From Bigelowiella natans CCMP2755 (taxonomy: Eukaryota; Protista; Cercozoa): DNA of 56,156 nucleotides. Positions within the stretch are counted from its first letter, which is position 1; each line of letters opens with the position of its first letter. Position numbers and translations under genes: made by a program. The notes beneath the pieces were generated by a model. The model did no database searches. It had not been told where the DNA came from and saw nothing but the letters and a program-made list of their open reading frames with translations. Positions 4,314-40,810 of this stretch are shown piece after piece. The stretch covers positions 1 to 56,156 of the forward strand of contig ADNK01003048.1 in NCBI GenBank assembly GCA_000320545.1. Direction: 5' to 3'.

Positions 4314-4938
4314 TGAATATATTGTACATATGCCGATATTCATCCACAGATGATGCGTTTTCAATGCAAATTTTGGACTGTGGACGATGGGACTCCACGG
4401 TTGGTCATATCATCAGATATTACAAGTGATGGTGATGGCGTCATCGCCGTCATCATCACCATCACCATCATCATCATCACCACCATCATCATCTAACCCT
4501 CCTCATACATCCATCTTCTTGGCAGTACATGGGACTACATCGACAAGATTATTCGAGAGAAGAAAAAAGACCAAAGCCCTTTCCAAGTGACCGCCTCATA
4601 ACTAACTACCTACCTAACTAACTAACTAACCAACACCCCCATCATAAAGCACTGTCGCAGTAGTAGTAGTAGTAGTAGTAGCAGCAGCAGCAAGAATAAA
4701 CACTGGGGAAAACAAGACTTCCTTCATAAGATATATCGTATATACCCTGATGTGAGTATTGGTGCTGGTGGTCTTGGTTTTTGTTGTTGTTTTTGTTGTT
4801 GTCGCACTTGTCGTTGTTAGCACCAATTTGCTGATACTGAAGAGGAGGATCGCAGTGATAATAATGACGACGCTGCCAACATTGTGTCCAAAACATATCT
4901 CAGAGAGCTGGTGGTGTTCATACGATGCAAACTCTTCT

Positions 4939-15745: not shown

Positions 15746-18694
15746 TCAATAAGAAGTTTTAGCAGCAAAAATAGACCATTTAACCTTTATGCGAGAAGAA
15801 CCCAACACATCGGACTTCCTGCTACCACTGCTACCCTCTGTTATGAGATCCTGATTTATTACTACTGGAAGGTTAAACAGATCTTCTTCTCCTGAATCAC
15901 CAACACCTTTTCTCGTAAGGAACGTCAAGGGCATGCGTATCACCCCAACTATGCTAGGTTGATTGTCTTCTATTGCATGCAGGGTTAGAGTTAAGAATAA
16001 GGAACTACTACTTGAACTAATACTGGTACCAATAGGAGGGGGATTATTAGCTGGGTCTTTATCGTCGTCGTCGTTGCCATCATAGTCATAAAAGTATGCC
16101 GATTTTCTGTCTTCATTCAGTAACTCAAAGCTCCATTTGCCGTTTTCTTCTCTTTCTTGTTGATTGATTCGGGAGGGTAACAAAGCAGGACAGGATGCAC
16201 TAATACTTGCTATTGTATCTGGATCGAATCCTTGTGATGATACCTCTTCATTCTCATCAATTGAATAATTTCGGTGAAGATCTATCTCGATAAGAGCACG
16301 CTTAGGTACGAATGAGTTGCTTTCTGTAAGACTTCTTACAGAATTGCTATTCTTACTACGATCATCCCTTCTTTTTCTACTACTATTGGCAGGTAAGTGT
16401 CGTTTCTTGTCCAAATGCTTCTTATCACTGTCACCATTAGCAAACACAAGCTGCTGCTTCTCAGTGGGAGGGGAAAGTCCAGGCAAGGGCCAAAGAGATG
16501 CTATATGATAATCAAGAATACCAATAACATCCTGTGCCTCTCTTCTTCTACCACCACCATCATCACCATCTTTAGCCAGCACATGAGCGCTGCTAGCAAC
16601 AATTTGACAGCTTCCAGAGAGAGAACCAGTAGGATTCATGAGTAGGCCTTTTGCTGGAATTTTGGCAATACCTAGCGTGGCCATATTTGTTTGCTTGCCG
16701 TCATCGGTTTCATAATCATCATCATCGCTATAATATCTTGAATCTTGATCATCATCGTCAGCCTGCACTAACAGCTCCACCATAATTTCAGCTGTTTGGA
16801 GGGCATTTATAAGAACTGCATCCGTTTTAACCCGATATTGCACAGTCAAGTTGTATTCTGGCGTTTTTCCTCCAACTAAATGAGAATGTTCTGGAGCAAA
16901 TGTCATAAAGTCTGTGGTGATACAAGTTAAGAGGTCGTCTCCAAACCCCTTAGTATTTTGGATGGTAGCTCGCATAATTCTAACGGAAATGATATTCTCG
17001 ATAACATTGGCTGACACTGGTGCTGACACTATGGGAGAAGGCAGTGATGGTGCTTCAATCCCAATGTTTTGCTCTGCTCTTCTTCGGTTCTTTACCAGAG
17101 CAGATGTGATTGAGAACATCGATGATGCAACAGAAGCGTTGTCTTCATTGAACGGTACGAGCAACGATGACTTCTTCGCTTCTGCCAGTAAGACCTTGAG
17201 TCTTTCAATTTCGGCATCCTTTGATGCTACCTCAGACTTCTGGTCGTCGATCGTACGTTGTTGAATGACAAGAAGCTTCCGCTTCGATTTGAGCTCCAGC
17301 GACAGTTCTTGATATCTCGCTTCTAAGCCATGAAGCTCTTTTTGCATACGAGGGTCTGCTGCTGCTGTTGAGCCAGTGTCGATACCATATACGCTTGATG
17401 GATTATCTCGTCGTCTCCTGACAATCTCAAGAGCGGCCTGCAGATCTTTGACATCGACGGCATTGGTCCCGAAAGTGCCATGGCCTTCCAGGATGGCAAT
17501 TCTTTCCTTCAAACCACCAAGTTGCTGTTTTGCAGAAAGAAGAAGGTCTTGCGTGTTGAGATGAACAAGCCTGTATTTTTCCTTGGCTTCCTTCTCATCT
17601 TCTACCTGAATCTTCAGTGCGCGACATTCCCTTCGCGTTTTTTGCAGTTCTTCTATTGTCTCATCTAGCATTCTTTTTGCCTTTACTTCCTTTGCTTGAT
17701 GTTTGGTGATCATGTCTTGGATTCTCTTCTCTTCCAATCTATCGCCTCGGAGAGCACTGGTATGCAAAGATTCTAGACGTCGAGCAAGCTCTTCCTTTTC
17801 TGCTCTTGTGTCGCCTAACATAGCTTCAAGTGCTGTCACATGATGGCTCTGCATTTCGTAGTTCTTGATATCACGACTATACTTAAGCAGCTTTTCTTTT
17901 GCAAGTAGCAATTGGTCTCTTTGGCGTTTGCACTGTTGGACTGCTTGTATTTGAATCTGTTTCTCAGCTCGCACACTCACTCGAAGTTGTTGGAAGTGAG
18001 ACTGTAACAATGATATTTTGGCCTTTTTCTCACGAAGTTGCTCCCATAGCATTTCGATTTCCTTAACATTCCTTTCCTTCTCTGACTTGAGACTCTCAAT
18101 CTCTTTTAGCTGCACGATGCCCTTGTCGTGTATAATTTGTGTATTCAGGTCACTATATCTTTTCTCAGTTTGAATTTCTTTTGTCATGATTATTTCTTTT
18201 GCCCTTCCTGGACGGAAGCTCTTGTTACCCCCTCCTTTGCTACCTTGATTGTGTTTCCCCTCTAATGTCGTGAGCGACAACGAGGTTGTCTCTGAATCTG
18301 CTGTTGCCGCCGCTGCTACGATAGGCGCACGATTCTGTTCATCTTGTATGCTATCGTCAGCAGTGTCGGTTTTTAAAGCTTGTACAAGCAGTTGGAGATT
18401 TTGCTTGGTGGCTGACAAGCTTCCCTCCCCTCTGTTCGACGGCAACTTTGGACCGATTCGTGATGAAGACGCGTCATCCCTTCTCTTTTTCCTTCCGTCT
18501 AGATCTTGAGGTTCCCTATGTGAGAAAAGATCTCTTCCATTTGCCAGTCGCTTAGTATCCCTCATATACCGAGTTTTAAGCTTCTTATAGCGCGTTCGAA
18601 TCTCCTCGTTCTCCTTCAAAAGGTTGATCTGGCGACTGCGAAACCTAAGAACTTGGTCTTCAAGCCGTCTAGCTTTTACGTTTTTGGGGTCCAT
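15746..18694 (-). CDS. RPGRIP1L: RPGRIP1L/fantom-like ciliary transition-zone protein (coiled coil + C2)
   Basis: 982-aa ORF. N-terminal LEDQVLR...LLKE...KKLKTR coil, long coiled coil, then ENIISVRI...TDFMTFAPEHSHLVGGKTPEYNLTVQYRV, which matches the first C2 domain of the RPGRIP1 family. The ATG directly follows an AG, so an upstream exon is possible. Confidence 0.75.
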   Translation of the reverse strand: MDPKNVKARRLEDQVLRFRSRQINLLKENEEIRTRYKKLKTRYMRDTKRLANGRDLFSHREPQDLDGRKKRRDDASSSRIGPKLPSNRGEGSLSATKQNLQLLVQALKTDTADDSIQDEQNRAPIVAAAATADSETTSLSLTTLEGKHNQGSKGGGNKSFRPGRAKEIIMTKEIQTEKRYSDLNTQIIHDKGIVQLKEIESLKSEKERNVKEIEMLWEQLREKKAKISLLQSHFQQLRVSVRAEKQIQIQAVQQCKRQRDQLLLAKEKLLKYSRDIKNYEMQSHHVTALEAMLGDTRAEKEELARRLESLHTSALRGDRLEEKRIQDMITKHQAKEVKAKRMLDETIEELQKTRRECRALKIQVEDEKEAKEKYRLVHLNTQDLLLSAKQQLGGLKERIAILEGHGTFGTNAVDVKDLQAALEIVRRRRDNPSSVYGIDTGSTAAADPRMQKELHGLEARYQELSLELKSKRKLLVIQQRTIDDQKSEVASKDAEIERLKVLLAEAKKSSLLVPFNEDNASVASSMFSITSALVKNRRRAEQNIGIEAPSLPSPIVSAPVSANVIENIISVRIMRATIQNTKGFGDDLLTCITTDFMTFAPEHSHLVGGKTPEYNLTVQYRVKTDAVLINALQTAEIMVELLVQADDDDQDSRYYSDDDDYETDDGKQTNMATLGIAKIPAKGLLMNPTGSLSGSCQIVASSAHVLAKDGDDGGGRRREAQDVIGILDYHIASLWPLPGLSPPTEKQQLVFANGDSDKKHLDKKRHLPANSSRKRRDDRSKNSNSVRSLTESNSFVPKRALIEIDLHRNYSIDENEEVSSQGFDPDTIASISASCPALLPSRINQQEREENGKWSFELLNEDRKSAYFYDYDGNDDDDKDPANNPPPIGTSISSSSSSLFLTLTLHAIEDNQPSIVGVIRMPLTFLTRKGVGDSGEEDLFNLPVVINQDLITEGSSGSRKSDVLGSSRIKVKWSIFAAKTSY

Positions 18695-31289: not shown

Positions 31290-33880
31290 CCCATCATGCA
31301 TGTCTGATGCACTCAAAATGTCACTTTGCAGAGTCTTCAGAATCTTGTGTGCACGACCATTGCTTGGAAAATCTTAGTCGCACTGTGTGCACCACCATCC
31401 CTGCACCATTCTGGCATTGAATTGCTTCACCATGCACAATCGTGCGCAACAGTTGCGTTGTGTGTCCTCAACGTGTGACAGCACGTGCAGTGTGCGATGT
31501 GATCATTGACTGTGCGTGCACGCACCACGTGTTCCAGCGTTGTGCCACGTCCGTCGTTGAACACACACGACACACCTAGTCACCAGCACGCCGCAACGTC
31601 ATTGCATCTCCATTGGTCGTGCCAATCACACGTGCATGCAAAAACACACGTGCGAACGGTGAGCCTCACAAAGTCAAAATGCACACAAAGGGGAACACCG
31701 TGCAATGTTGTGTGGTTCACTGTCGTGCCAGCGCACTGCTAGACTGCGTGCCCATCTGCTGAGCCTGCATCTGGGCGTGTGTGCTTCACCCGGCTAGCCA
31801 CCAGACTAGCAGAGCTAGCCAGCCTGGCTCGCACAAGCCAGCAAGATTCCAAGCTTGCGCCTTGCGAGATCAGCGTCGTGAAGCTTTCGTTGAAGACATC
31901 TAGATGTGTGCTGAACTCGTGTGCGCGTGCACGAGTCCATGAGTGACAAGTCCAGAAGTGCCTGCGTGGTCGTGCAACTCGCGCATGATTGCACGCCTTT
32001 GTGAGTTGTGTGATAGTTGCAAGACAAGCTAGCAAACCTGGCAAGCCAGCAAAACATCCACGCCTTTGCGACCACGCAACGTGTGAACACCTGGATGCGC
32101 AATCACATCTGCAGCTCTCTAGCTCTGGCTTCCAGTCGACCCTTTTGTTCGTTTCATTGCAATCGCGCTCATCGATGTGTAGATGCGATGTTTCCTTGAT
32201 CGATGACGACACAGACCAATGAAAACAGGCTCGCGCGCTGACACCACACGTCCTGACGTGCGCGGAAAACACGAGCACCATCTGGACCATCGTGCAGCAG
32301 TGTTCGCAAACAAACGTTTGTGAAAACACATTGCGATGACGTGTTGTGAGGATCCCTCGTGTGCACACGACAGAGCTCACAACAACAGTGTCAGCGAGCC
32401 CGAAAGTCACTGTCGCTGCTGGACTGCCTTGTTCGTCGTGCCAGCGCTGGAGCGTGCCAGCTAGCCAGCCAGCCAGGCCAGCAGGATTGAAGTGGAAAAG
32501 GCAGCCGCAAACTTCTTGCACAGCAGAACTTGGAAATTTTCAGTGCTCACTTGCAACGATTTGTTGCTTGCTGGCAGCTGGCACGCACAATGCCCAGCTA
32601 GCTGCACTCATCGGTGGCTCCACCCATTGGGCTTGTGGACAGCACCAGAGTGGCAGAGCGTTGAACGTTGAACACTCAGAACCACACGTCAATGGAGCGA
32701 TTGAAAGGATCATGGGATCCATGAATGTGGTGCAGCTGAAAATGGAAAGAAAGAAGTGATTTTGTCATTGGAGCAGTTCAAAGGATCGTGGGACTGTGGA
32801 CAGGCTGACTCCGTGTCCTCCCCAAACCACATGCGGCAAACAACCAACTGGAACGCCAAGAAATGAATCATGGGAAACGCTGACTCCTCCGTGCCCTCCA
32901 TTGAACCTTGAATGAACGAATGAACAAATGAATTGGTTCCAGCAGTCATGGGATCTGCAAGGATCAACAGAGTGTGCTGACCCACCTGCTCCCACCCCTC
33001 ACTGCGTCTTCAGATCGAGCATGGGATTCAATGAACAATGAACAATGATGAAGAACTGCATTTCCAAAATGCAACAAGACACTTGCAGTGCACGAAACGC
33101 AGTGCCTCGAACTGACTTCAGTGAGGACCATCTGGTGAAACCAAAAGGAATCAAGAATGGCATCATGGCCACTCCTCCGTTCCTAGTTTCATTGTTTTCA
33201 GTGCCTGATGTTTGCCAACTTCAGGATCACGCATCCCTGAATCCTGTCGTGATGGTTTGCTCATGCTTGGAGATCACCAAGCAAGAACACCACACCTGCG
33301 ACCCCCAAGAGCACAATCCCATGGACCACACCTTCATTCATGGTCTGCTTCACACCTGCCACAACATCCCCGGCTTTTGCGGAGACATTGCCCTCACTGG
33401 AAGGCATGAAGATGGAGGAGGATGCATTCTTCGTTCCTGGTCCATTTGGACAGCGAGCTTCGCAATGACCACAGCACACCCGGCTTTTGCGGAGACAAAG
33501 CCCCCATCATTGCAATCAGAAGCACCAGCTAGCTAGCTTCACGCCAACCACAACATCCCCGGCCCAATGGAGACATTGCCCGGAGGGCATGAAGTTTGAG
33601 GAGGACACATTCATCCTGATGGGATTCATCCAGGGTGAATCTTGGACACAGATCCGAAAAGGCTTCGTTTGGCATCCAATTCTCCAGTGGCCTGCCCCAC
33701 CGGTGAACAGGAATGTGGTGCAGGGAAGGGGAAAAGCCACCCTCGTGACCGAAAAACTCACCACCCAGTGCCAATTCGGCGAATGTGACTTTGAATCTTG
33801 AACACTGAAACAATGAAACAATGATGAAAAACCACATTTCCAAAGTGTTGCAAGACACTTGCATGCATCCTTCGTGTGGC
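31290..33880. mobile_element. Saturated TpA-depleted repeat block (hypermutated element relics)
   Basis: Manual count finds ~16 TA in ~2.6 kb, 13 of them in CTAG. Overlapping ORFs almost lack Tyr and are Cys/His-rich. Internal direct repeats at 33027-33092 and 33809-33867. Confidence 0.75.
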
Positions 33881-34100
33881 TACCGAGTCACCGGTGGCTG
33901 GGGCGACAAGTCTGTCTGCCCCACCAGTGACCAGCAATGTGGTTCAGGGGTAGGAGGTGACCAACCCCCCCGCCCATCACCGCATCGCACCAATTTTTTT
34001 CCGAATGTAACTTTGAATCTTGAATGCAGATCCACACATCCTTCGCCTGGCTACCTAGTCACCGGTGGCTGGGGCGACATGTCTGTCTGTCCCACCGACT
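33866..34100. repeat. Two ~60-bp direct repeats, each an imperfect hairpin
   Basis: catccttcg..ggctacc.agtcaccggtggctggggcgaca.gtctgtctg.cccacc at 33866-33925 and 34037-34096. Confidence 0.85.
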
Positions 34101-34245: not shown

Positions 34246-34353
34246 CAAACCAGCCATGGGAACTAATAAGTCCAAACCAGCCATGGGAACTAATCAGTCC
34301 AAACCAGCCATGGGAACTAATCAGTCCAAACCAGCTATGGGAACTAATCAGTC
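34246..34353 (+). repeat. 4 x 27-bp tandem repeat containing the start codon
   Basis: caaaccagc(c/t)atgggaactaat(a/c)agtc, with in-frame ATGs at 34256, 34283, 34310 and 34337. Confidence 0.95.
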
Positions 34354-37168
34354 CATCCATGAGGCTGCACGGAAGAATGATGTCAATAGTCTGAAGCGTT
34401 TGCTATCGCGGGGAGGCAACATCGAGGAGCGGGATGATAATGGTAAGCTGGTGCATATCTGCGGCAGCTATGAACGACATTTAGTAAATGAGTTCCAGTG
34501 CCGAGTTTTGCGAGTGAGAGTGTAGATTTTCATAATGGCCGGGGATGGGTAGAAGGGTTAAGGATGGCATCGAGAAGATGGAATTAGGCTTGTTAGTAAA
34601 TGAATGAGTGAACATGCAACTTTATCTTGGATGAAGGAACAGCGGCGAAACACACGTGGTGTAATTGTGGATTGAGTCGGAATTTTAGTAGTATGAACAA
34701 TGTTAGCATCATGAGCAGCTTTTAAAAAGTTGCCAATGGACCAGAATTAGCAAATGCATGACAGTAGTTCTAGCAGAAATGGGGCTGTGAAACATTGGTT
34801 TAGTTTAATAATGCACTAGTGATCATTTACATTTGTCACTGAGGTTCCTTTAAAATTTATAAGTGTGAATATAGTGCTTTAAAAGAAGGCTGGGAGCCAC
34901 TTATCGATGAATATACATTTGTATCTATTGTGACGGTATGAATAGCATGTTCAACAATGTCTGACTGATGGCATTCGATTTTGGGTCTGTTGGTATCCGT
35001 TAGGCGACACGCCGTTGATTAATGCCGCGTACAAAGGCAAGCTAGATGTTGTGCAGTTTTTGTTGGCATGAAGGCAAACATCGAAGCTAAGAATAATAAA
35101 GGTACGTTCACTAGCAACAGCGACAGAAACAAATAGGAAGCGCGATGTGTGAGTTAACAGGAAGAGAATGTAGATGTAGTAGTTATAGTATATTGACAGT
35201 AAGTGGTAGTAGTAGTAGTAGTAGTAGTTGTTGTAGTAGTAATGAGGTACCGTTATTTTTATTCTTGTTGTAATTATTTTGTTTTGTAGATGTAGGGGGA
35301 CTTGAGAGAGGAGATAAGGAGGGGGGGGGAGTAGGGGTCGGGTCATAAATTGATATATTTGATATGTATTGTTAAGTTGTGGTGAGGATGTTCTATACTG
35401 TCTGACTGACGGCATCGATATTGGGTCTATCGGTCTCTGTTAGGTGATACGCCATTAATAGAGGCCGCCGGCAATGGCAAGCTAGATGTTGTGCAGTACC
35501 TTGTTGGCATGAAGGCAAACATCGAGGCCAAGTGCAATGCCAGTACGTTCACTAGCAAGAGCGACAGTAACAAATAGGAATGATGGTGTGTGAGTCAAGA
35601 GTAAGGGCATGTAGATGTAGTAGTTATACAATATTGACAGTGATGAGGATGTTCTATACTGTCTGTCTGACGGCATCGATATTGGGTCTGTTGGTATCCG
35701 TTAGGTTACACGCCGTTGATTAATGCCGCGTACTTTGGCAAGCTAGATGTTGTGCAGTACCTTGTTGGCATGAAGGCAAACATCGAAGCTAAGAGTAATA
35801 TAGGTAGGTGCACTAGCAAAAGCGACAGTAACAAATAGGAAGCGTGATGTGGGAGTCAAGAGTAAGGGCATGTAGATGTAGTAGTTATAGAATATTGACA
35901 GTGATGAGGATGTTCTATACTGTCTGACTGATGGCATTCGATTTTGGGTCTGTTGGTATCCGTTAGGCGACACGCCGTTGATTAAGGCCGCCGGCGAAGG
36001 CAAGCTAGATGTTGTGCAGTACCTTGTTGGCATGAAGGCAAACATCGAAGCTAAGAGTAAACAAGGTAGGTGCACTAGTTACAGCGACAGTAACAACAGT
36101 GACAGTAGTAAGTAAGAAGCGCGATTGTGCCATTTATACTCCGCATCATCTCCCTTCCGCAACCAACGAGAACCCATCGCATCCCAGCTCACATATGCAT
36201 CACCCCGCTGTTTGTGATGGTTTTCTTGCATTAATAAACTATACCAAGCACATTGCGCAAAATGCCTTAAGGCACGTCGTGCTCTAACTAAAGACTCCTT
36301 GGTGTGAGAGTTGGAGTGAAAAATTTTAGTAGCATTGTATTCGTGTTGGTAGTATTAGAGATTGCATGATAGCAGCTTTATCATATATGGAGGTTATACA
36401 TACAGTCTGGGTTGGGTTAGGGTTAGGGTTAGGGTTATACAACAATATTGTAGTTTCGGGGTAATAGTAATTATTTTAGACAATGGTGAAGCAGATTTAT
36501 AAGATTGAGTATCTTATTTTAAAAGGGTTTGAAAAGATAACTTTGGTTAAGAGACGATTACTAGTGAATTTTGCAGTGTTCGTGATGGTTTGATAGCTGT
36601 TGGCTAATTTAGATTGATTGATGCATTGATATTGCTGTTTTTAACTGGGAAATGTGCATTGATGCCATACAGGGAAAACAGCGTCAGGTTGGGCTAAGGA
36701 GAAGGGTCATTCAAATATCATGGCATTCCTACGCAACGCCGCCAAGGTTCAGGAAACGAGTGAAAAAGCTGAGGAGAAAGTCGTGCAAAAGGCCGAAGAG
36801 GTTCAACGAAAGCTGAATGAAGCTGAGAGACTGTTGGAAAAGGCCAAGAAAGAGGCCCAAGAAGCGGACCGAAAGCGAAAGGAGTCTGTAAAAAGGGTAA
36901 GACAAATGGCGGAAGAGATCAAACAAAACAAATGCGAAAGGAGACCGAGAAGAAATAATAACATATGCAATCATGTATACACAATGTGTAATTTGGTGGT
37001 AGGACCGAGATAGAGGCAGCCCAGCTGAGTCTATGGAAAAAAACATAAAGGTATATTTCAAAAAATGCATAACTAGCTTAGTAATGCGTAACAACGCAAG
37101 GGTTGAAAGGCACATCAAATTGATATGCGCGTTGAAGGGAATTCTATATACACTATGATTATGATGGT

Positions 37169-37207
<39 letters not shown>

Positions 37208-37302
37208 CACATATATGTGATCATTGTGAAAATGCGAAGCGAACACTAAAGAGACAAAAAGCAAAGGGGTGGAAAAACCAGATTCGTAAATCATATATAT
37301 AC

Positions 37303-37333
<31 letters not shown>

Positions 37334-37528
37334 TATGTATATATATGTTATATGTATATTATGTATAATTTGGAATTTTGTTAATCGTATAGAACAGTAT
37401 GTAATTCAGGCCTCTTATCTAAGGAAAAATCAACTTCCATCACTCTTATCCTTGATAGGAAAAATATTGGGAAAAAGAGCTCGTGGAGATAAAACAGCAG
37501 CTAGCACTGCAAAATAAGGAGGTTTTAC

Positions 37529-37565
<37 letters not shown>

Positions 37566-38871
37566 CCCACAAAATCGTTTACTTGTGATGAAGTGCTGCC
37601 TCTATGTTCAAATATATAATTTTCAAGTTTTTGCCTTGGTTATGGCATATGTCACTTCTGAACCATACCACTACCGCAGCTGGGCTCGAAAGCTGATGCT
37701 CCAGAGAATATGCTCGATTGCATAAGAGGGCATAAGCTCCTAACTCTTTTCCACAGGTGTCACACGATAACCATCTTGGGAGAAAATTGTGATGCTAGAG
37801 CCCTTTTACCTGCTAGCCAACGGCCTTTTCATTTCGCTTGTATGGTTATGTTCCGTATCTCTCAGAGGCCTCTACAGCGAACTCATCGACTCCTACCAGC
37901 TGTCGTTCATCGTACCAAAAGTATTTTCGGAAACATCGCATAAGAAATTCCCATAGATCGTTTACCCTGACAAGATCCTGTGACACTTTCAGGGCATTGT
38001 GGAACTATCGACCGATCTCTCCACGTCTCTCATTGAGGCAATCCCTCACTTAGAATAAGCTACACGAGAGCGTAGCGACTCAGTCGGCACCTTCTGCAAC
38101 CCAACGCCACAGCATACATATCTCCCACGTTACAAATGACGAACAAAGCATGTTTGTTGTTACTGTATTAGTTTGCAGGCGGCATTTCCTGGATTTTCTC
38201 AATGATAGCTGCGGGAAAGAAGTACCTTGACGATACGAAGAAGAAATCAGACTACACCAAGATTCGAGCCATTGCTAAAGATGCATTTTCAGCTTCGCAG
38301 GTCATCTCTAAGGCCGTCAATGGTGAGTATTACAAAGGACTGTCAATGAATATTTGTTTCGAGTGAAGAAGCAGCAGCACATTGTGCAATTAGCCCATCG
38401 TTTAAACCGCGAGGGATAGCTCCGTTCTCCGCAGTCGTCGTTGTAATGTTTCGACTTCTGGTGATGCATGATGTTGACCCAGATCGACCCTAACATCCAA
38501 CGTTCTATTATAGCCATCACGTTGCACTACACAGCGACGATCCAGGACTCCAATAAGGTCGTTTGTTTCATAATTGACATTAATAACCACAGAAGCTATG
38601 TCGTCATCATGCATCTTCTCATTCACACAGCTCAAGGAGGCTGTGGAGGCAAGCGGTTTCCTCGAGAGAATGGTGTGTGCTACCCGTTTCACGAGCTTGT
38701 GCGCATGTTAACTAGGATAAGAAGAGGCATGGGGAGGAGGGAAAGGGGGAGGGGGGGTAATAGGAGAGGGGCTTTGAAAGGTTGGAATAGCAAGAGAGGC
38801 ACATGCATAATTTATAACCCCCATTTCGCTCCCAGAATGAAAAATGGAATTCTTGGCTAAGGGGCAAAAGG

Positions 38872-38923
<52 letters not shown>

Positions 38924-40051
38924 TTCTATGTGCAACACACACTTACAAACACATGCATACACATATTCTACATATACAATGTAATATTTTAACTTTTCCG
39001 TAAAATGTGTATTTTTTCCGGTTCGTATGCTGTGTGGAAGGCACACCCACAAATACCTGTCAATCCGCAATATAGCCCCGCCCCCCCCCTCTCCCTGCCT
39101 AATTTTTGTCTGAGGTTTCAAGATAAATCCATGTCGCCTAATTTATTGACTTCTTTTGTCACATAGGAGTGTGGATGAAGAGGTGTCCAATTTCGCCCGT
39201 TGCACGGCAGCTAAGATCGTCCTCTGCATCCTGAAAGAGGTGAAGGCGTGTGTCTCCAATGAGTTTGCTGGTTCATATCTCTCACCAACTTGCCTTTCAT
39301 CACCGACCTATAGAGTGCTCTTGAGAAGATAAGCCGTGTGATGTTTATACATGTACCCACGCAAGATCTACATATGGATTTAGGGTATGGGAGTTCCTCC
39401 AGGTGACAAGGACGCTGCTACACGGAGGCTTTGCACGTGTGCCGGAGTCGAGTACCGGAACTATTCGCAGCAGATCGTGCTAGTAGCCGGTCGTCAATGA
39501 ACTTAATATTGTGCACTTCACATGACGAATAATGATATGTACATGTAAATTTAGTACATACGTGCACGTAAAATAGTTCCCGCGCCGCCCACAGATTTGC
39601 AGGCAGCAACATCACGTCTCAGCATAAGCATCAATCACAATTATGGTTGATGTAACGTTAGGAGTGAAGAAAACAGCTCAAAGTTCCCCCGCGAATGGGC
39701 CAACGACTGTCCTCTCTCCTGATAAAGTGATGACGGAAATGCTGAAAATGCAGCAGAAAATGGCGGAGATGGAGGCCGAAAGGGCGAGAGAGAAGGCCGA
39801 AAGAGCGAGAGAGCAGAAGGAATTCAGAGCCCTTCAAGAAAAGTTAAAATCATTGGTTCCAGGTACACACGCACAGCACAATTAGCCCCTGGTTTCCTGT
39901 CGATCTCACGCTTGGATCGTTACCCTCAGATGACGACATAGAACATCTAGGTGATCAGTCCGGAGGAGAACAGGTTTGAAGCAACTCTAGATCTGATAAT
40001 TATTAAATGTTTTACGAGTATTTGTGAAGGTATATTTGATCATCTCCCTCT

Positions 40052-40104
<53 letters not shown>

Positions 40105-40350
40105 TTTCTCACTGCATTCATACTGCTTGCGCGCATACGTTCGAATTAGATGCAGATCCAGGCCCAGATGGAGAAGAGAGTGCTATCACCTCGAAGGAAA
40201 GGCACAGGCCAAGTCATATACTTTCACCTTTTAACCTCTCTTCGGCTTCTTCTTTTTCTTCTTCATATGAGAGCCTTCACTACCCACATTCCAGCACACA
40301 CGCTCTCCCTCTTCATTATAATAAGTATCATATATGGCGCATTTTTAATA

Positions 40351-40393
<43 letters not shown>

Positions 40394-40810
40394 TTATCTC
40401 TCGCTGTATATATCTGTTGTGTCTATGTGTGCATCTTTCCAGCTCCTCTTTTCTCTCATATGAATTGTATGTACCGTTTATGTGAATACATGTTTGTGCG
40501 AATGTATATTAATGAGTATTCCTGCTTCCTGCTGATCAGGATACATTAACAACTGCTGAAAAAGAGATAAGGTACGCGATATCTGGGTTTCGGGTTACTC
40601 GGGGGGGGGGCTAGATGGAGGGGAAAGTGTTTGGTTCCTATGATCAAGCGAAGATGGAAATCACATACGGCTCTATATTTTCTCTCTGTGATCTCAATCA
40701 TATCCAAATTCTTTGCAATGCTTAGGCTCAAGATATTGGAAGAGCAAGTTGGACATCTTCAGAAAGATGTGGATAGAGTTGTGATGAAAACTTTCAAGAA
40801 GAAAAAATGA
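34256..40810 (+). CDS. Predicted N-myristoylated ankyrin-repeat protein with coiled coils and an unknown helical domain
   Basis: Exon 1 34256-34442; ankyrin exons 35004-35101, 35444-35542, 35705-35803, 35967-36065; capping repeat and coiled coil from 36673; further exons GLYSELIDSYQLSFIVPK-GIVELSTD, GGISWIFSMIAAGKKYLDD, FARCTAAKIVLCILKE; last exon LKILEEQVGHLQKDVD...KKKK*. Confidence 0.8.
34955..36095 (+). repeat. Tandem exon+intron cassettes (~261-bp period), one ankyrin repeat each
   Basis: Four near-identical cassettes including intron sequence. All introns are phase 1. Confidence 0.95.
36409..36437 (+). repeat. Interstitial telomeric (TTAGGG)n tract
   Basis: gggttgggttagggttagggttagggtta inside an intron. 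Confidence 0.8.

What the first reader, a model, noticed from the sequence alone, without database searches (positions are those of the whole stretch)
34955..36095. Natural DARPin-like ankyrin exon-cassette array
Seen: each ~99-bp phase-1 exon encodes one repeat, (D/Y)TPLI(N/E/N/K)AA(YK/GN/YF/GE)GKLDVVQYLVGMKANIEAK(NNK/CNA/SNI/SKQ). Framework and introns are nearly identical, while changes cluster at the beta-turn and helix-1 positions. Sharing is patchwork: A/D share the 5' end, A/C share aatgccgcgtac, B/D share gccgccggc, and A/B versus C/D share donors. Known: these are the ankyrin target-binding positions randomised in DARPins, and one-repeat-per-exon shuffling is described for brown-algal LRR/TPR candidate immune genes. 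Inference: a recombining or alternatively spliced, diversifying receptor.
Basis: partly seen in the sequence, partly recalled or inferred. Interest (0 to 1): 0.82.

Follow-up and report, generated by a model that had tools for sequence, protein, structure and literature searches.

The report
Hypervariable ankyrin exon cassettes, truncated copy
A gene of the marine alga Bigelowiella natans carries four near-identical one-repeat ankyrin exons that differ almost only on the predicted binding face, as in at least 16 sister loci, several of which end in a protein kinase; this copy has no kinase and its first cassette is broken.

Summary
The four exon+intron units are real: phase-1 ankyrin cassettes at 35004-35101, 35444-35542, 35705-35803 and 35967-36065.

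The cassettes lie between an N-cap exon (MGTNQS start) and a C-cap/coiled-coil exon.

The genome is Bigelowiella natans: JGI model Bigna1|91184 is encoded here but starts downstream of the cassettes.

Three close paralogous loci and 13 more distant ones share the architecture, with 1-9 cassettes each. At least seven of them continue into a TKL-type kinase. The window copy is a 2.7-kb 5' partial duplicate with no kinase.

Binding-face codons change far faster than introns:
- Within the window, 17/24 versus 23/97 variable sites (p=4e-5).
- Between paralogs, 47% versus 10% (p=5e-14).
- Nonsynonymous divergence at binding-face codons exceeds intron divergence in 14 of 15 loci.
- The framework is under purifying selection.

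The units are mosaics. This supports germline diversifying selection with unequal crossing-over or gene conversion.

I found no evidence for cassette-level alternative splicing or somatic recombination.

The scan has already reported this family on other pieces of this genome.

The parts
34246..34355 (+). 27-bp tandem repeat, 4.1 copies. Each copy holds an in-frame ATG followed by GTN(K/Q)SKPA. Specific to the window copy.
   Evidence: TRF; translation; the paralogs have a single copy
34256..34443 (+). Exon 1. Possible ATGs at 34256, 34283, 34310 and 34337. N-terminal capping ankyrin repeat with an MGxxxS (N-myristoylation-like) start. Donor G|GTAAGC, phase 1.
   Evidence: weak Pfam Ank hit; conserved in three paralogs; same exon in JGI model P0200 of paralog C1788
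35004..35101 (+). Cassette A. 98 nt, with a 1-bp deletion plus two substitutions at 35057-35061, causing a frameshift and TGA at 35069-35071. Splice sites are intact.
35102..35443 (+). Intron A>B, 342 nt. This is the long ancestral form, homologous to the ~370-nt introns of the paralogs. Contains a GTA-type microsatellite at 35170-35241.
35444..35542 (+). Cassette B. 99 nt, phase 1-1, one ankyrin repeat. Keeps the paralog-like synonymous states GAG GCC.
35705..35803 (+). Cassette C. 99 nt, phase 1-1, one ankyrin repeat.
35967..36065 (+). Cassette D. 99 nt, phase 1-1, one ankyrin repeat.
36066..36672 (+). Long intron between the last cassette and the C-cap exon. Holds a window-specific (GGGTTA)5 at 36409-36437. 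Its 3' part is conserved in the paralogs.
   Evidence: This stretch is retained at 97% identity in transcript contig L065, and the homologous intron of a paralog-like gene is retained in L064
36673..36896 (+). C-terminal capping ankyrin repeat plus a Lys/Glu-rich helical stretch. Phase-1 acceptor, donor GTAAGA at 36897. JGI model 91184 starts at ATG 36720 inside this exon.
37003..37050 (+). Small exon (DRDRGS...NIK), the last segment shared with the paralogs. Paralogy ends near 37066.
37459..40795 (+). Eleven further exon matches of JGI model 91184. Unrelated to the family, no Pfam domain, no kinase.
   Evidence: One search finds no kinase match anywhere on this contig.

Best explanation
The region is the repeat-encoding part of a Bigelowiella natans gene from a family of ankyrin-cassette proteins found at at least 17 loci.

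Family architecture. A family gene has an N-cap exon, then 1-9 cassette exons, then a C-cap/charged-helix exon. Each cassette is 99 nt, phase 1-1, encodes one repeat, and is followed by a copy of the same intron. In at least seven loci TKL-type kinase exons follow.

How the arrays evolve. They change in the germline by tandem duplication and unequal crossing-over of exon+intron units, with gene-conversion-like exchange. This keeps frameworks and introns alike and produces mosaics and different cassette numbers.

Selection. The residues on the concave binding face are kept different and replaced fast: the beta-turn, one face of helix 1, and the loop before the next repeat. This indicates diversifying selection for new binding specificities (inferred). 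The framework is under purifying selection.

The window copy. It is a 2.7-kb partial 5' duplicate, running from the start codon to the small exon after the C-cap. It has no kinase, and its first cassette is frameshifted. An in-frame product would need exon A to be skipped, which phase 1-1 allows. Otherwise the locus is decaying.

Shown: the exon structure, the family, the rate contrast, the mosaicism and the missing kinase. Inferred: the binding function, myristoyl membrane anchoring, and the sensor role of the kinase-bearing paralogs.
For: Structure.

Organism and annotation: P0130 is EukProt Bigelowiella natans / jgi Bigna1 91184 and maps to 36720-40795.

Paralogs: C1787 has 4 cassettes, C1798 has 3, C1788 has 1. 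JGI model P0200 of C1788 uses exactly the predicted exon junctions.

Wider family: 13 more loci with 1-9 cassettes and the same caps.

Kinase: exons lie downstream in C1787, C1798, C2939, C2069, C554, C360 and C1015, but not in the window. Pfam PK_Tyr_Ser-Thr, E 5e-49.

Splicing: transcript contig L064 shows an N-cap and seven cassettes joined at the predicted junctions.

Rates:
- Within-window variable sites: 17/24 binding-face nt versus 23/97 intron nt, p=4e-5. For the a-priori DARPin codons, 11/18, p=0.003.
- C1787 versus C1798 positional counterparts: 47% at binding-face codons, 10.2% in introns, 4.0% in framework, p=5e-14.
- Within-locus pairs over 15 loci: a-priori codons pN 0.325, introns 0.132, framework pS 0.149, framework pN 0.038. 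In 14 of 15 loci binding-face pN exceeds intron divergence, sign test p=0.001.
- Among the window's own intact cassettes: framework pN 0.000, framework pS 0.218.

Mosaic.

Position of variable codons: they flank and lie within helix 1 and the inter-repeat loop in the AlphaFold model of L064.

Residue use at those codons: mostly W, Y, R, N, D.
Against: - Exon A is frameshifted, the kinase is absent, and the JGI model leaves the cassettes out. The window copy may therefore be a pseudogene whose pattern is inherited from a functional past.
- I found no transcript of the window's own cassettes.
- The eight variable codons were first picked by eye. This is mitigated by the a-priori DARPin set and by the independent 13-locus family.
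- The pairwise counts are not phylogenetically independent, and recombination prevents a clean tree-based site test.
- Cap exons show weak constraint: pN/pS is 0.4-1 or higher on few sites.
- No ligand is known.
Confidence: 0.75

Rival explanations
1. The window locus is now a dead, partial duplicate (pseudogene). The binding-face pattern was inherited from the functional parent and from a period of function. Nothing is currently being diversified here.
For: - Frameshift and TGA in cassette A.
- Paralogy ends at about 37066 and no kinase is present on the contig.
- JGI's EST-extended model starts at 36720, downstream of the cassettes.
- There are window-specific insertions: a 27-bp repeat at the start codon and a telomere-like repeat in the last intron.
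Against: - Cassettes B-D, which duplicated within this locus (they share a 180-nt intron deletion), have accumulated framework synonymous differences (pS 0.218) but no framework replacements (pN 0.000). They also carry many binding-face replacements (pN 0.449).
- All eight cassette splice sites are intact.
- A C-cap exon 97% identical to the window's is transcribed in a related sample.
Confidence: 0.3
2. The cassettes are alternatively spliced (skipped in combinations), so one gene yields a repertoire of binders.
For: - All cassettes are 99 nt and phase 1-1, so any subset can be skipped in frame.
- Exon A would have to be skipped for an open frame.
- In B. natans, exon skipping is associated with short exons and short introns (PMC6142364).
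- Transcript L064 of a paralog-like gene uses an alternative donor inside the C-cap exon and retains an intron.
Against: - No isoform lacking a cassette was seen.
- L064 carries seven cassettes in a row.
- PMC6142364 reports that exon skipping in B. natans has no 3n bias and is probably noisy, and that later data sets show much lower skipping than the genome paper did.
- Two exact-pattern scans for window-type cassette transcripts found nothing.
Confidence: 0.12
3. Somatic or programmed recombination of cassettes, VLR-like, as was hypothesised for Ectocarpus.
For: Only the architecture supports this: homologous introns flank every cassette, and the units are mosaic.
Against: A single assembly cannot show somatic variation. 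The mosaics are fixed in the assembly, and germline unequal crossing-over is enough to explain them. No flanking donor arrays of incomplete cassettes were seen in the window.
Confidence: 0.03
4. A local mutational hotspot, rather than selection, makes those codons variable.
For: Synonymous divergence at the variable codons is also somewhat raised (pS 0.234 versus 0.149).
Against: - The variable codons form four separate patches that coincide with the structurally defined ankyrin binding positions (PMC1261162, PMC4986451).
- The codons between the patches are nearly invariant.
- Part of the raised pS is a path-counting effect in codons with multiple changes.
Confidence: 0.05

Closest known systems
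Ectocarpus ROCO-LRR and NB-ARC-TPR candidate immune genes (Zambounis et al. 2012, PMC3341825; PMC11378527)
   Same: One repeat per exon. Exon+intron units are shuffled or duplicated. Diversifying selection acts on the repeat domain. The repeat array is joined to a signalling domain, and the family shows birth and death of copies.
   Different: The repeat type is ankyrin, not LRR or TPR. The output domain in the paralogs is a TKL-type kinase, not ROC-COR or NB-ARC. The lineage is a rhizarian unicell, not a brown alga. The window copy has no output domain at all.
Fungal NLRs with highly internally conserved ANK/TPR/WD repeats (Dyrka et al. 2014, PMC4986451)
   Same: Near-identical ankyrin repeats. 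[quoted passage not shown] Repeat number varies, with concerted evolution by repeat exchange.
   Different: The fungal repeats are not one per exon. They are attached to NACHT/NB-ARC. No NOD domain was seen here. Amino-acid identity between the window's cassettes is about 76-82%, below their 85% criterion.
Designed ankyrin repeat proteins (DARPins; positions as cited in PMC1261162)
   Same: N-cap, a few consensus-like internal repeats and a C-cap. Five of the six randomised positions (repeat positions 2, 3, 5, 13, 14) are among the most variable here. PDB sequence matches include many DARPins.
   Different: DARPins are synthetic. Here position 33 is conserved (Lys), while positions 1, 9 and 10 also vary. 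The natural proteins carry a charged helical tail and, in the paralogs, a kinase.
Ankyrin-repeat protein kinases (ILK, TNNI3K, RIPK4/ANKK1 type; from general knowledge)
   Same: Ankyrin repeats and a TKL/tyrosine-kinase-like catalytic domain in one polypeptide (paralogs).
   Different: Those have fixed, divergent repeats without cassette exons or hypervariability. No orthology was tested.

Membership tests
Ankyrin repeat (Pfam PF00023) | 33-residue repeat matching the Ank profile | tested here: met
   Exons B, C and D hit at E 9e-6 to 3e-5, above the gathering score. Exon 1 is weak at E 0.0045. Exon A matches only up to its frameshift.
Ankyrin repeat (Pfam PF00023) | Helix-turn-helix plus loop stacking | tested here: met
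   AlphaFold model of the spliced paralog-like transcript L064 shows eight helix pairs (mean pLDDT 72). PDB sequence matches include ankyrin-1 and DARPins. The window's own spliced product was not folded, because the joined step was left out.
B. natans ankyrin-cassette kinase family (this scan; not described in papers found) | N-cap exon, 99-nt phase-1 cassette exons with homologous introns, C-cap/charged-helix exon | tested here: met
B. natans ankyrin-cassette kinase family (this scan; not described in papers found) | Kinase exons downstream of the C-cap exon | tested here: not met
   The P0031 search of the whole genome matches the window only at 36693-36947. Kinase exons are found at C1787, C1798 and five other loci.
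Exon-shuffled candidate immune receptors (Ectocarpus type) | One repeat per exon with diversifying selection on the repeats | tested here: met
Exon-shuffled candidate immune receptors (Ectocarpus type) | Evidence of exon shuffling between or within loci | tested here: inconclusive
   All three incompatible splits occur in spatial blocks among the four units (runs test p=0.008-0.03). Cassette numbers differ (1, 3, 4, 4), and C1787/C1798 align in two registers. No formal recombination test was run on the whole family.
Exon-shuffled candidate immune receptors (Ectocarpus type) | Role in immunity or non-self recognition | not testable with these tools
   No expression or infection data could be reached.
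Fungal-type NLR with hypervariable ANK repeats | NACHT or NB-ARC nucleotide-binding domain | tested here: not met
   No such Pfam hit in P0130, P0031, P0151 or P0200.
N-myristoylated protein | Met-Gly start with Ser/Thr at position 6 | tested here: met
   MGTNQS in the window (four times over). MGSNSS in C1798 and C1788. C1787 and L064 have Ala at position 2. Actual modification was not testable.

The most novel reading that the evidence does not exclude
Bigelowiella natans uses near-identical ankyrin exon cassettes as a general, germline-diversified recognition module, bolted onto different outputs. These outputs include kinases (shown here for paralogs) and a Roco/caspase-like protein (another note of this scan, untested by me). 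Under this reading the family is an innate-immune-like intracellular sensor repertoire in a rhizarian unicell. Kinase-less, myristoylated copies such as this one would act as membrane-bound decoys or adaptors. Exon skipping of the phase-1 cassettes would add isoform diversity.
Probability: 0.15. Interest if true: 0.8.

Novelty: new variant of a known kind. Interest (0 to 1): 0.55.

Why it matters
Fast-evolving repeat sensors built from shuffled units are known from plants, animals, fungi (ANK/TPR/WD on NLRs) and brown algae (LRR/TPR exons). Ankyrin versions built one repeat per exon, attached to kinases, in a chlorarachniophyte would extend this design to Rhizaria and to a new repeat/output combination. 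I found no paper that describes it.

The family is also a natural experiment in ankyrin binder diversification. It varies nearly the same positions that protein engineers randomise.

This locus adds one detail. The recognition module can be duplicated away from its kinase, and such copies can start to decay.

Tried and rejected
- Word-index protein search with the C-cap exon: nothing in the 62-198 aa range.
- Profile search of 1.84 billion representatives with the C-cap/helix alignment: swamped by generic ankyrin proteins. Only P0130 (the window's JGI model) and P0031 (a transcript with a kinase) were specific.
- Word-index search with the seven-cassette transcript ORF: mostly generic ankyrin proteins. 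It did return the JGI models P0190, P0200 and P0205.
- Two exact-pattern scans of metagenome contigs found no match. One used a window-type cassette framework 24-mer. The other used the spliced exon 1 to cassette A/B/D junction.
- Rfam scan of the window: nothing.
- A motif scan found no further ankyrin cassette anywhere else in the window on either strand, so there is no silent donor array.
- L065 joins a window-like C-cap exon (97% identity) to kinase exons 96-100% identical to C1798. I could not decide whether this is another strain's intact gene or an assembly chimera, so I do not use it as evidence that the window gene has a kinase.
- The order and number of cassettes in L064 may also be affected by short-read assembly of repeats. 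I rely only on its exon-exon junctions.
- A SAM-like C-terminal domain suspected by eye in the paralogs got no Pfam support and was dropped.
- A spliced protein of the window gene was never joined for searching or folding.

Full report
WHAT IS THERE

The window is contig C689 of a 91.4-Mb eukaryotic assembly. I verified the organism as Bigelowiella natans. A protein encoded in the window (P0130) is EukProt EP00466_Bigelowiella_natans_P007924, which is jgi|Bigna1|91184.

On the + strand, 34955-36095 holds four tandem exon+intron units (TRF period 261, score 1105; alignment). Each unit has an AG acceptor and a GT donor. Read with the last base of the previous exon (phase 1), each encodes one 33-residue ankyrin repeat.

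Exons B (35444-35542), C (35705-35803) and D (35967-36065) are 99 nt. Each passes the Pfam Ank gathering score.

Exon A (35004-35101) is 98 nt. Where B-D read TACCTT, A reads TTTTT (35057-35061). Its frame therefore shifts and ends at TGA 35069-35071. Unit A also differs in length: its intron is 342 nt, against 162-163 nt for B and C.

- the peptides of B-D;
- the near-identical framework;
- introns that are more alike (88-93%) than the exons (78-91%);
- the patchwork sharing.

GENE MODEL

- Exon 1 runs from one of four in-frame ATGs (34256 to 34337) to 34443. The four ATGs were created by a window-specific 27-bp tandem repeat. Exon 1 encodes an N-terminal capping repeat that starts MGTNQS, a myristoylation-type motif. 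It ends in a phase-1 donor.
- After cassette D comes a 607-nt intron. It leads to a phase-1 acceptor at 36672|36673.
- The next exon (36673-36896) encodes a C-terminal capping repeat and a Lys/Glu-rich helix.
- I first took this exon for the last one. P0130 shows it is not: a donor at 36897 joins it to 37003-37050 and then to eleven more exon matches up to about 40795.
- The JGI model starts at ATG 36720, inside the C-cap exon, and omits all cassettes. It has no Pfam domain.

PARALOGS AND FAMILY

The whole 261-bp unit, intron included, recurs only on three other contigs. C1787 has four cassettes, C1798 has three and C1788 has one. All three have the same exon 1 and C-cap exon.

JGI's model for C1788 (P0200, Bigna1|139097) uses exactly the junctions I predicted.

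Searching the genome with the C-cap exon found at least 15 loci. Scanning 13 fetched loci showed the same plan everywhere: an N-cap exon, 1-9 cassettes of 99 nt about 400 nt apart, then a C-cap plus charged helix. One contig (C239) holds two such genes in tandem.

A transcript-derived relative, P0031, continues from the C-cap into a kinase domain (PF07714, E 5e-49). Its kinase exons lie downstream of the ankyrin part in C1787, C1798, C2939, C2069, C554, C360 and C1015. On the window's contig it matches only 36693-36947.

Homology between the window and its paralogs runs only from 34327 to about 37066. The window gene is therefore a 2.7-kb partial 5' duplicate without the kinase. C1788 has also lost its kinase core.

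IS THE VARIATION MORE THAN NEUTRAL?

Numbering. I number the repeat from its Gly, so G=1 and T=3. The DARPin-randomised positions 2, 3, 5, 13, 14 and 33 (PMC1261162) then become codons 32, 33, 2, 10, 11 and 30.

Entropy. In 66 intact cassettes from 17 loci, entropy is highest at codons 2, 10, 33, 11, 7, 6, 31 and 32. Most framework codons are near zero.

Within the window. 17 of 24 nucleotides in those eight codons vary among A-D, against 23 of 97 intron nucleotides (p=4e-5). For the a-priori DARPin codons the figure is 11 of 18 (p=0.003).

Between positional counterparts of C1787 and C1798. Divergence is 10.2% in introns, 4.0% in the framework and 47% in the eight codons (p=5e-14). It is 46% in the a-priori codons (p=1e-10).

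Over all within-locus pairs of 15 loci:
- a-priori codons have pN 0.325;
- introns 0.132;
- framework pS 0.149;
- framework pN 0.038;
- in 14 of 15 loci binding-face pN exceeds intron divergence (sign test p=0.001).

Among the window's intact cassettes. Framework pN is 0.000, framework pS is 0.218 and binding-face pN is 0.449. So the cassettes were under purifying selection on the scaffold and diversifying selection on the binding face after they duplicated in this locus.

Structure. In an AlphaFold model of the spliced paralog-like transcript L064 (mean pLDDT 72):
- codons 6, 7 and 10 lie in helix 1;
- codon 11 lies at the end of helix 1;
- codon 2 lies just before helix 1;
- codons 31-33 lie in the inter-repeat loop.

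This is the concave face that carries positive selection in fungal NLR ankyrin repeats (PMC4986451). The residues used there are mostly W, Y, R, N and D.

RECOMBINATION

Among the four window units all three incompatible splits occur, in spatial blocks:
- AD|BC at -34..+2;
- AC|BD at +20..+28, including a synonymous GCG/GCC site;
- AB|CD at the donor.

A runs test gives p=0.008-0.03.

Exon trees and intron trees disagree. A, C and D share derived synonymous states. B keeps the paralog state. Yet B and C share the 180-nt intron deletion.

C1787 and C1798 align in two registers, one unit apart. C858 has identical neighbouring cassette pairs.

This is what unequal crossing-over and gene conversion in the germline produce. 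Nothing here requires or shows somatic rearrangement.

EXPRESSION AND SPLICING

Contig L064 (JGI sample 3300031120) carries an N-cap and seven cassettes joined exactly at the predicted junctions. It retains the last long intron. It also uses an internal donor of the C-cap exon to join straight to the kinase.

L065 (sample 3300031459) is 97% identical to window 36494-36897 and then continues into C1798-like kinase exons. It may come from another strain or may be an assembly chimera.

I found no transcript of the window's own cassettes and no cassette-skipping isoform.

Because every cassette is 99 nt and phase 1-1, skipping is frame-neutral. Skipping A would be needed for an open frame. This remains an inference. 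PMC6142364 reports that exon skipping in B. natans is associated with short exons and short introns, but shows no 3n bias and is probably noisy.

MECHANISM

Most likely (0.75): a germline-diversifying binding module of a kinase family, present here as a truncated copy that may be decaying.

By analogy with Ectocarpus ROCO/NB-ARC-TPR genes (PMC3341825) and fungal NLRs (PMC4986451), the kinase-bearing paralogs are plausible intracellular sensors. Their ligand and any immune role are unknown.

STEPS LEFT OUT AND EARLIER NOTES

Exons were searched one by one by reference. Natural spliced sequences (L064, P0200, P0130) were used instead.

The scan has reported this phenomenon before on other pieces of this genome (s1-724764, s1-724766, s1-718286). 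My tests agree with the first two. I did not test the third.

Noticed in passing
window 34246-34355: A 27-bp tandem repeat (4.1 copies, 97% matches) multiplies the start codon and the first nine codons (MGTN(K/Q)SKPA). This gives four in-frame ATGs, each in a GCCATGG context. The paralogs have one copy.
   Followed up: partly
window 36409-36437: An interstitial telomere-like (GGGTTA)5 lies inside the last cassette-to-C-cap intron. In the paralogs about 150 nt of unrelated sequence occupies the same place.
   Followed up: no
window 36720-40795: JGI model Bigna1|91184 (estExt_fgenesh1_pg.C_920013) starts at a Met inside the C-cap ankyrin exon and runs through 12 further exon matches with no Pfam domain. 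The annotation misses exon 1 and all cassettes, and may fuse two genes.
   Followed up: partly
window 33000-34100: A GC-rich stretch (52%) holds internal direct repeats on the + strand. These include a 60-nt pair 171 nt apart encoding GY(R/L)VTGGWGD(K/M)SVCPT, and a pair 776 nt apart. No Pfam hit. It may be exons of an upstream Cys-rich gene.
   Followed up: no
window 15746-18694 (-): A 982-aa uninterrupted ORF with an RPGRIP1-type C2 domain (PF11618, E 1e-11). This is an unusually long single exon for an intron-rich genome.
   Followed up: no
L054 (G000:C858), cassettes at locus positions 4481/4893 and 5305/5717: Neighbouring cassette pairs encode identical peptides, indicating a very recent two-unit tandem duplication within an array.
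   Followed up: no
L053 (G000:C360) 1931-2584 and other family loci: The charged helix after the C-cap is itself an 18-residue repeat (EKKARQEAEEVERRRKES type). Its copy number differs between loci: six copies in C360, two or three elsewhere.
   Followed up: no
L064 1613-1716 versus G000:C1798: A transcript of a paralog-like gene uses an internal donor (AAG|GTTCAG) in the C-cap exon. It splices in frame directly to the exon before the kinase, skipping the charged helix and two small exons. The same contig retains the long intron upstream.
   Followed up: partly
G000:C777 86093-90609 and 94108-94376; G000:C1451 93824-94094: Intronless relatives occur here: ankyrin repeats at about 100-nt spacing with the same framework, and long single-exon kinase ORFs (700-727 aa) 34-35% identical to the family kinase.
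   Followed up: no
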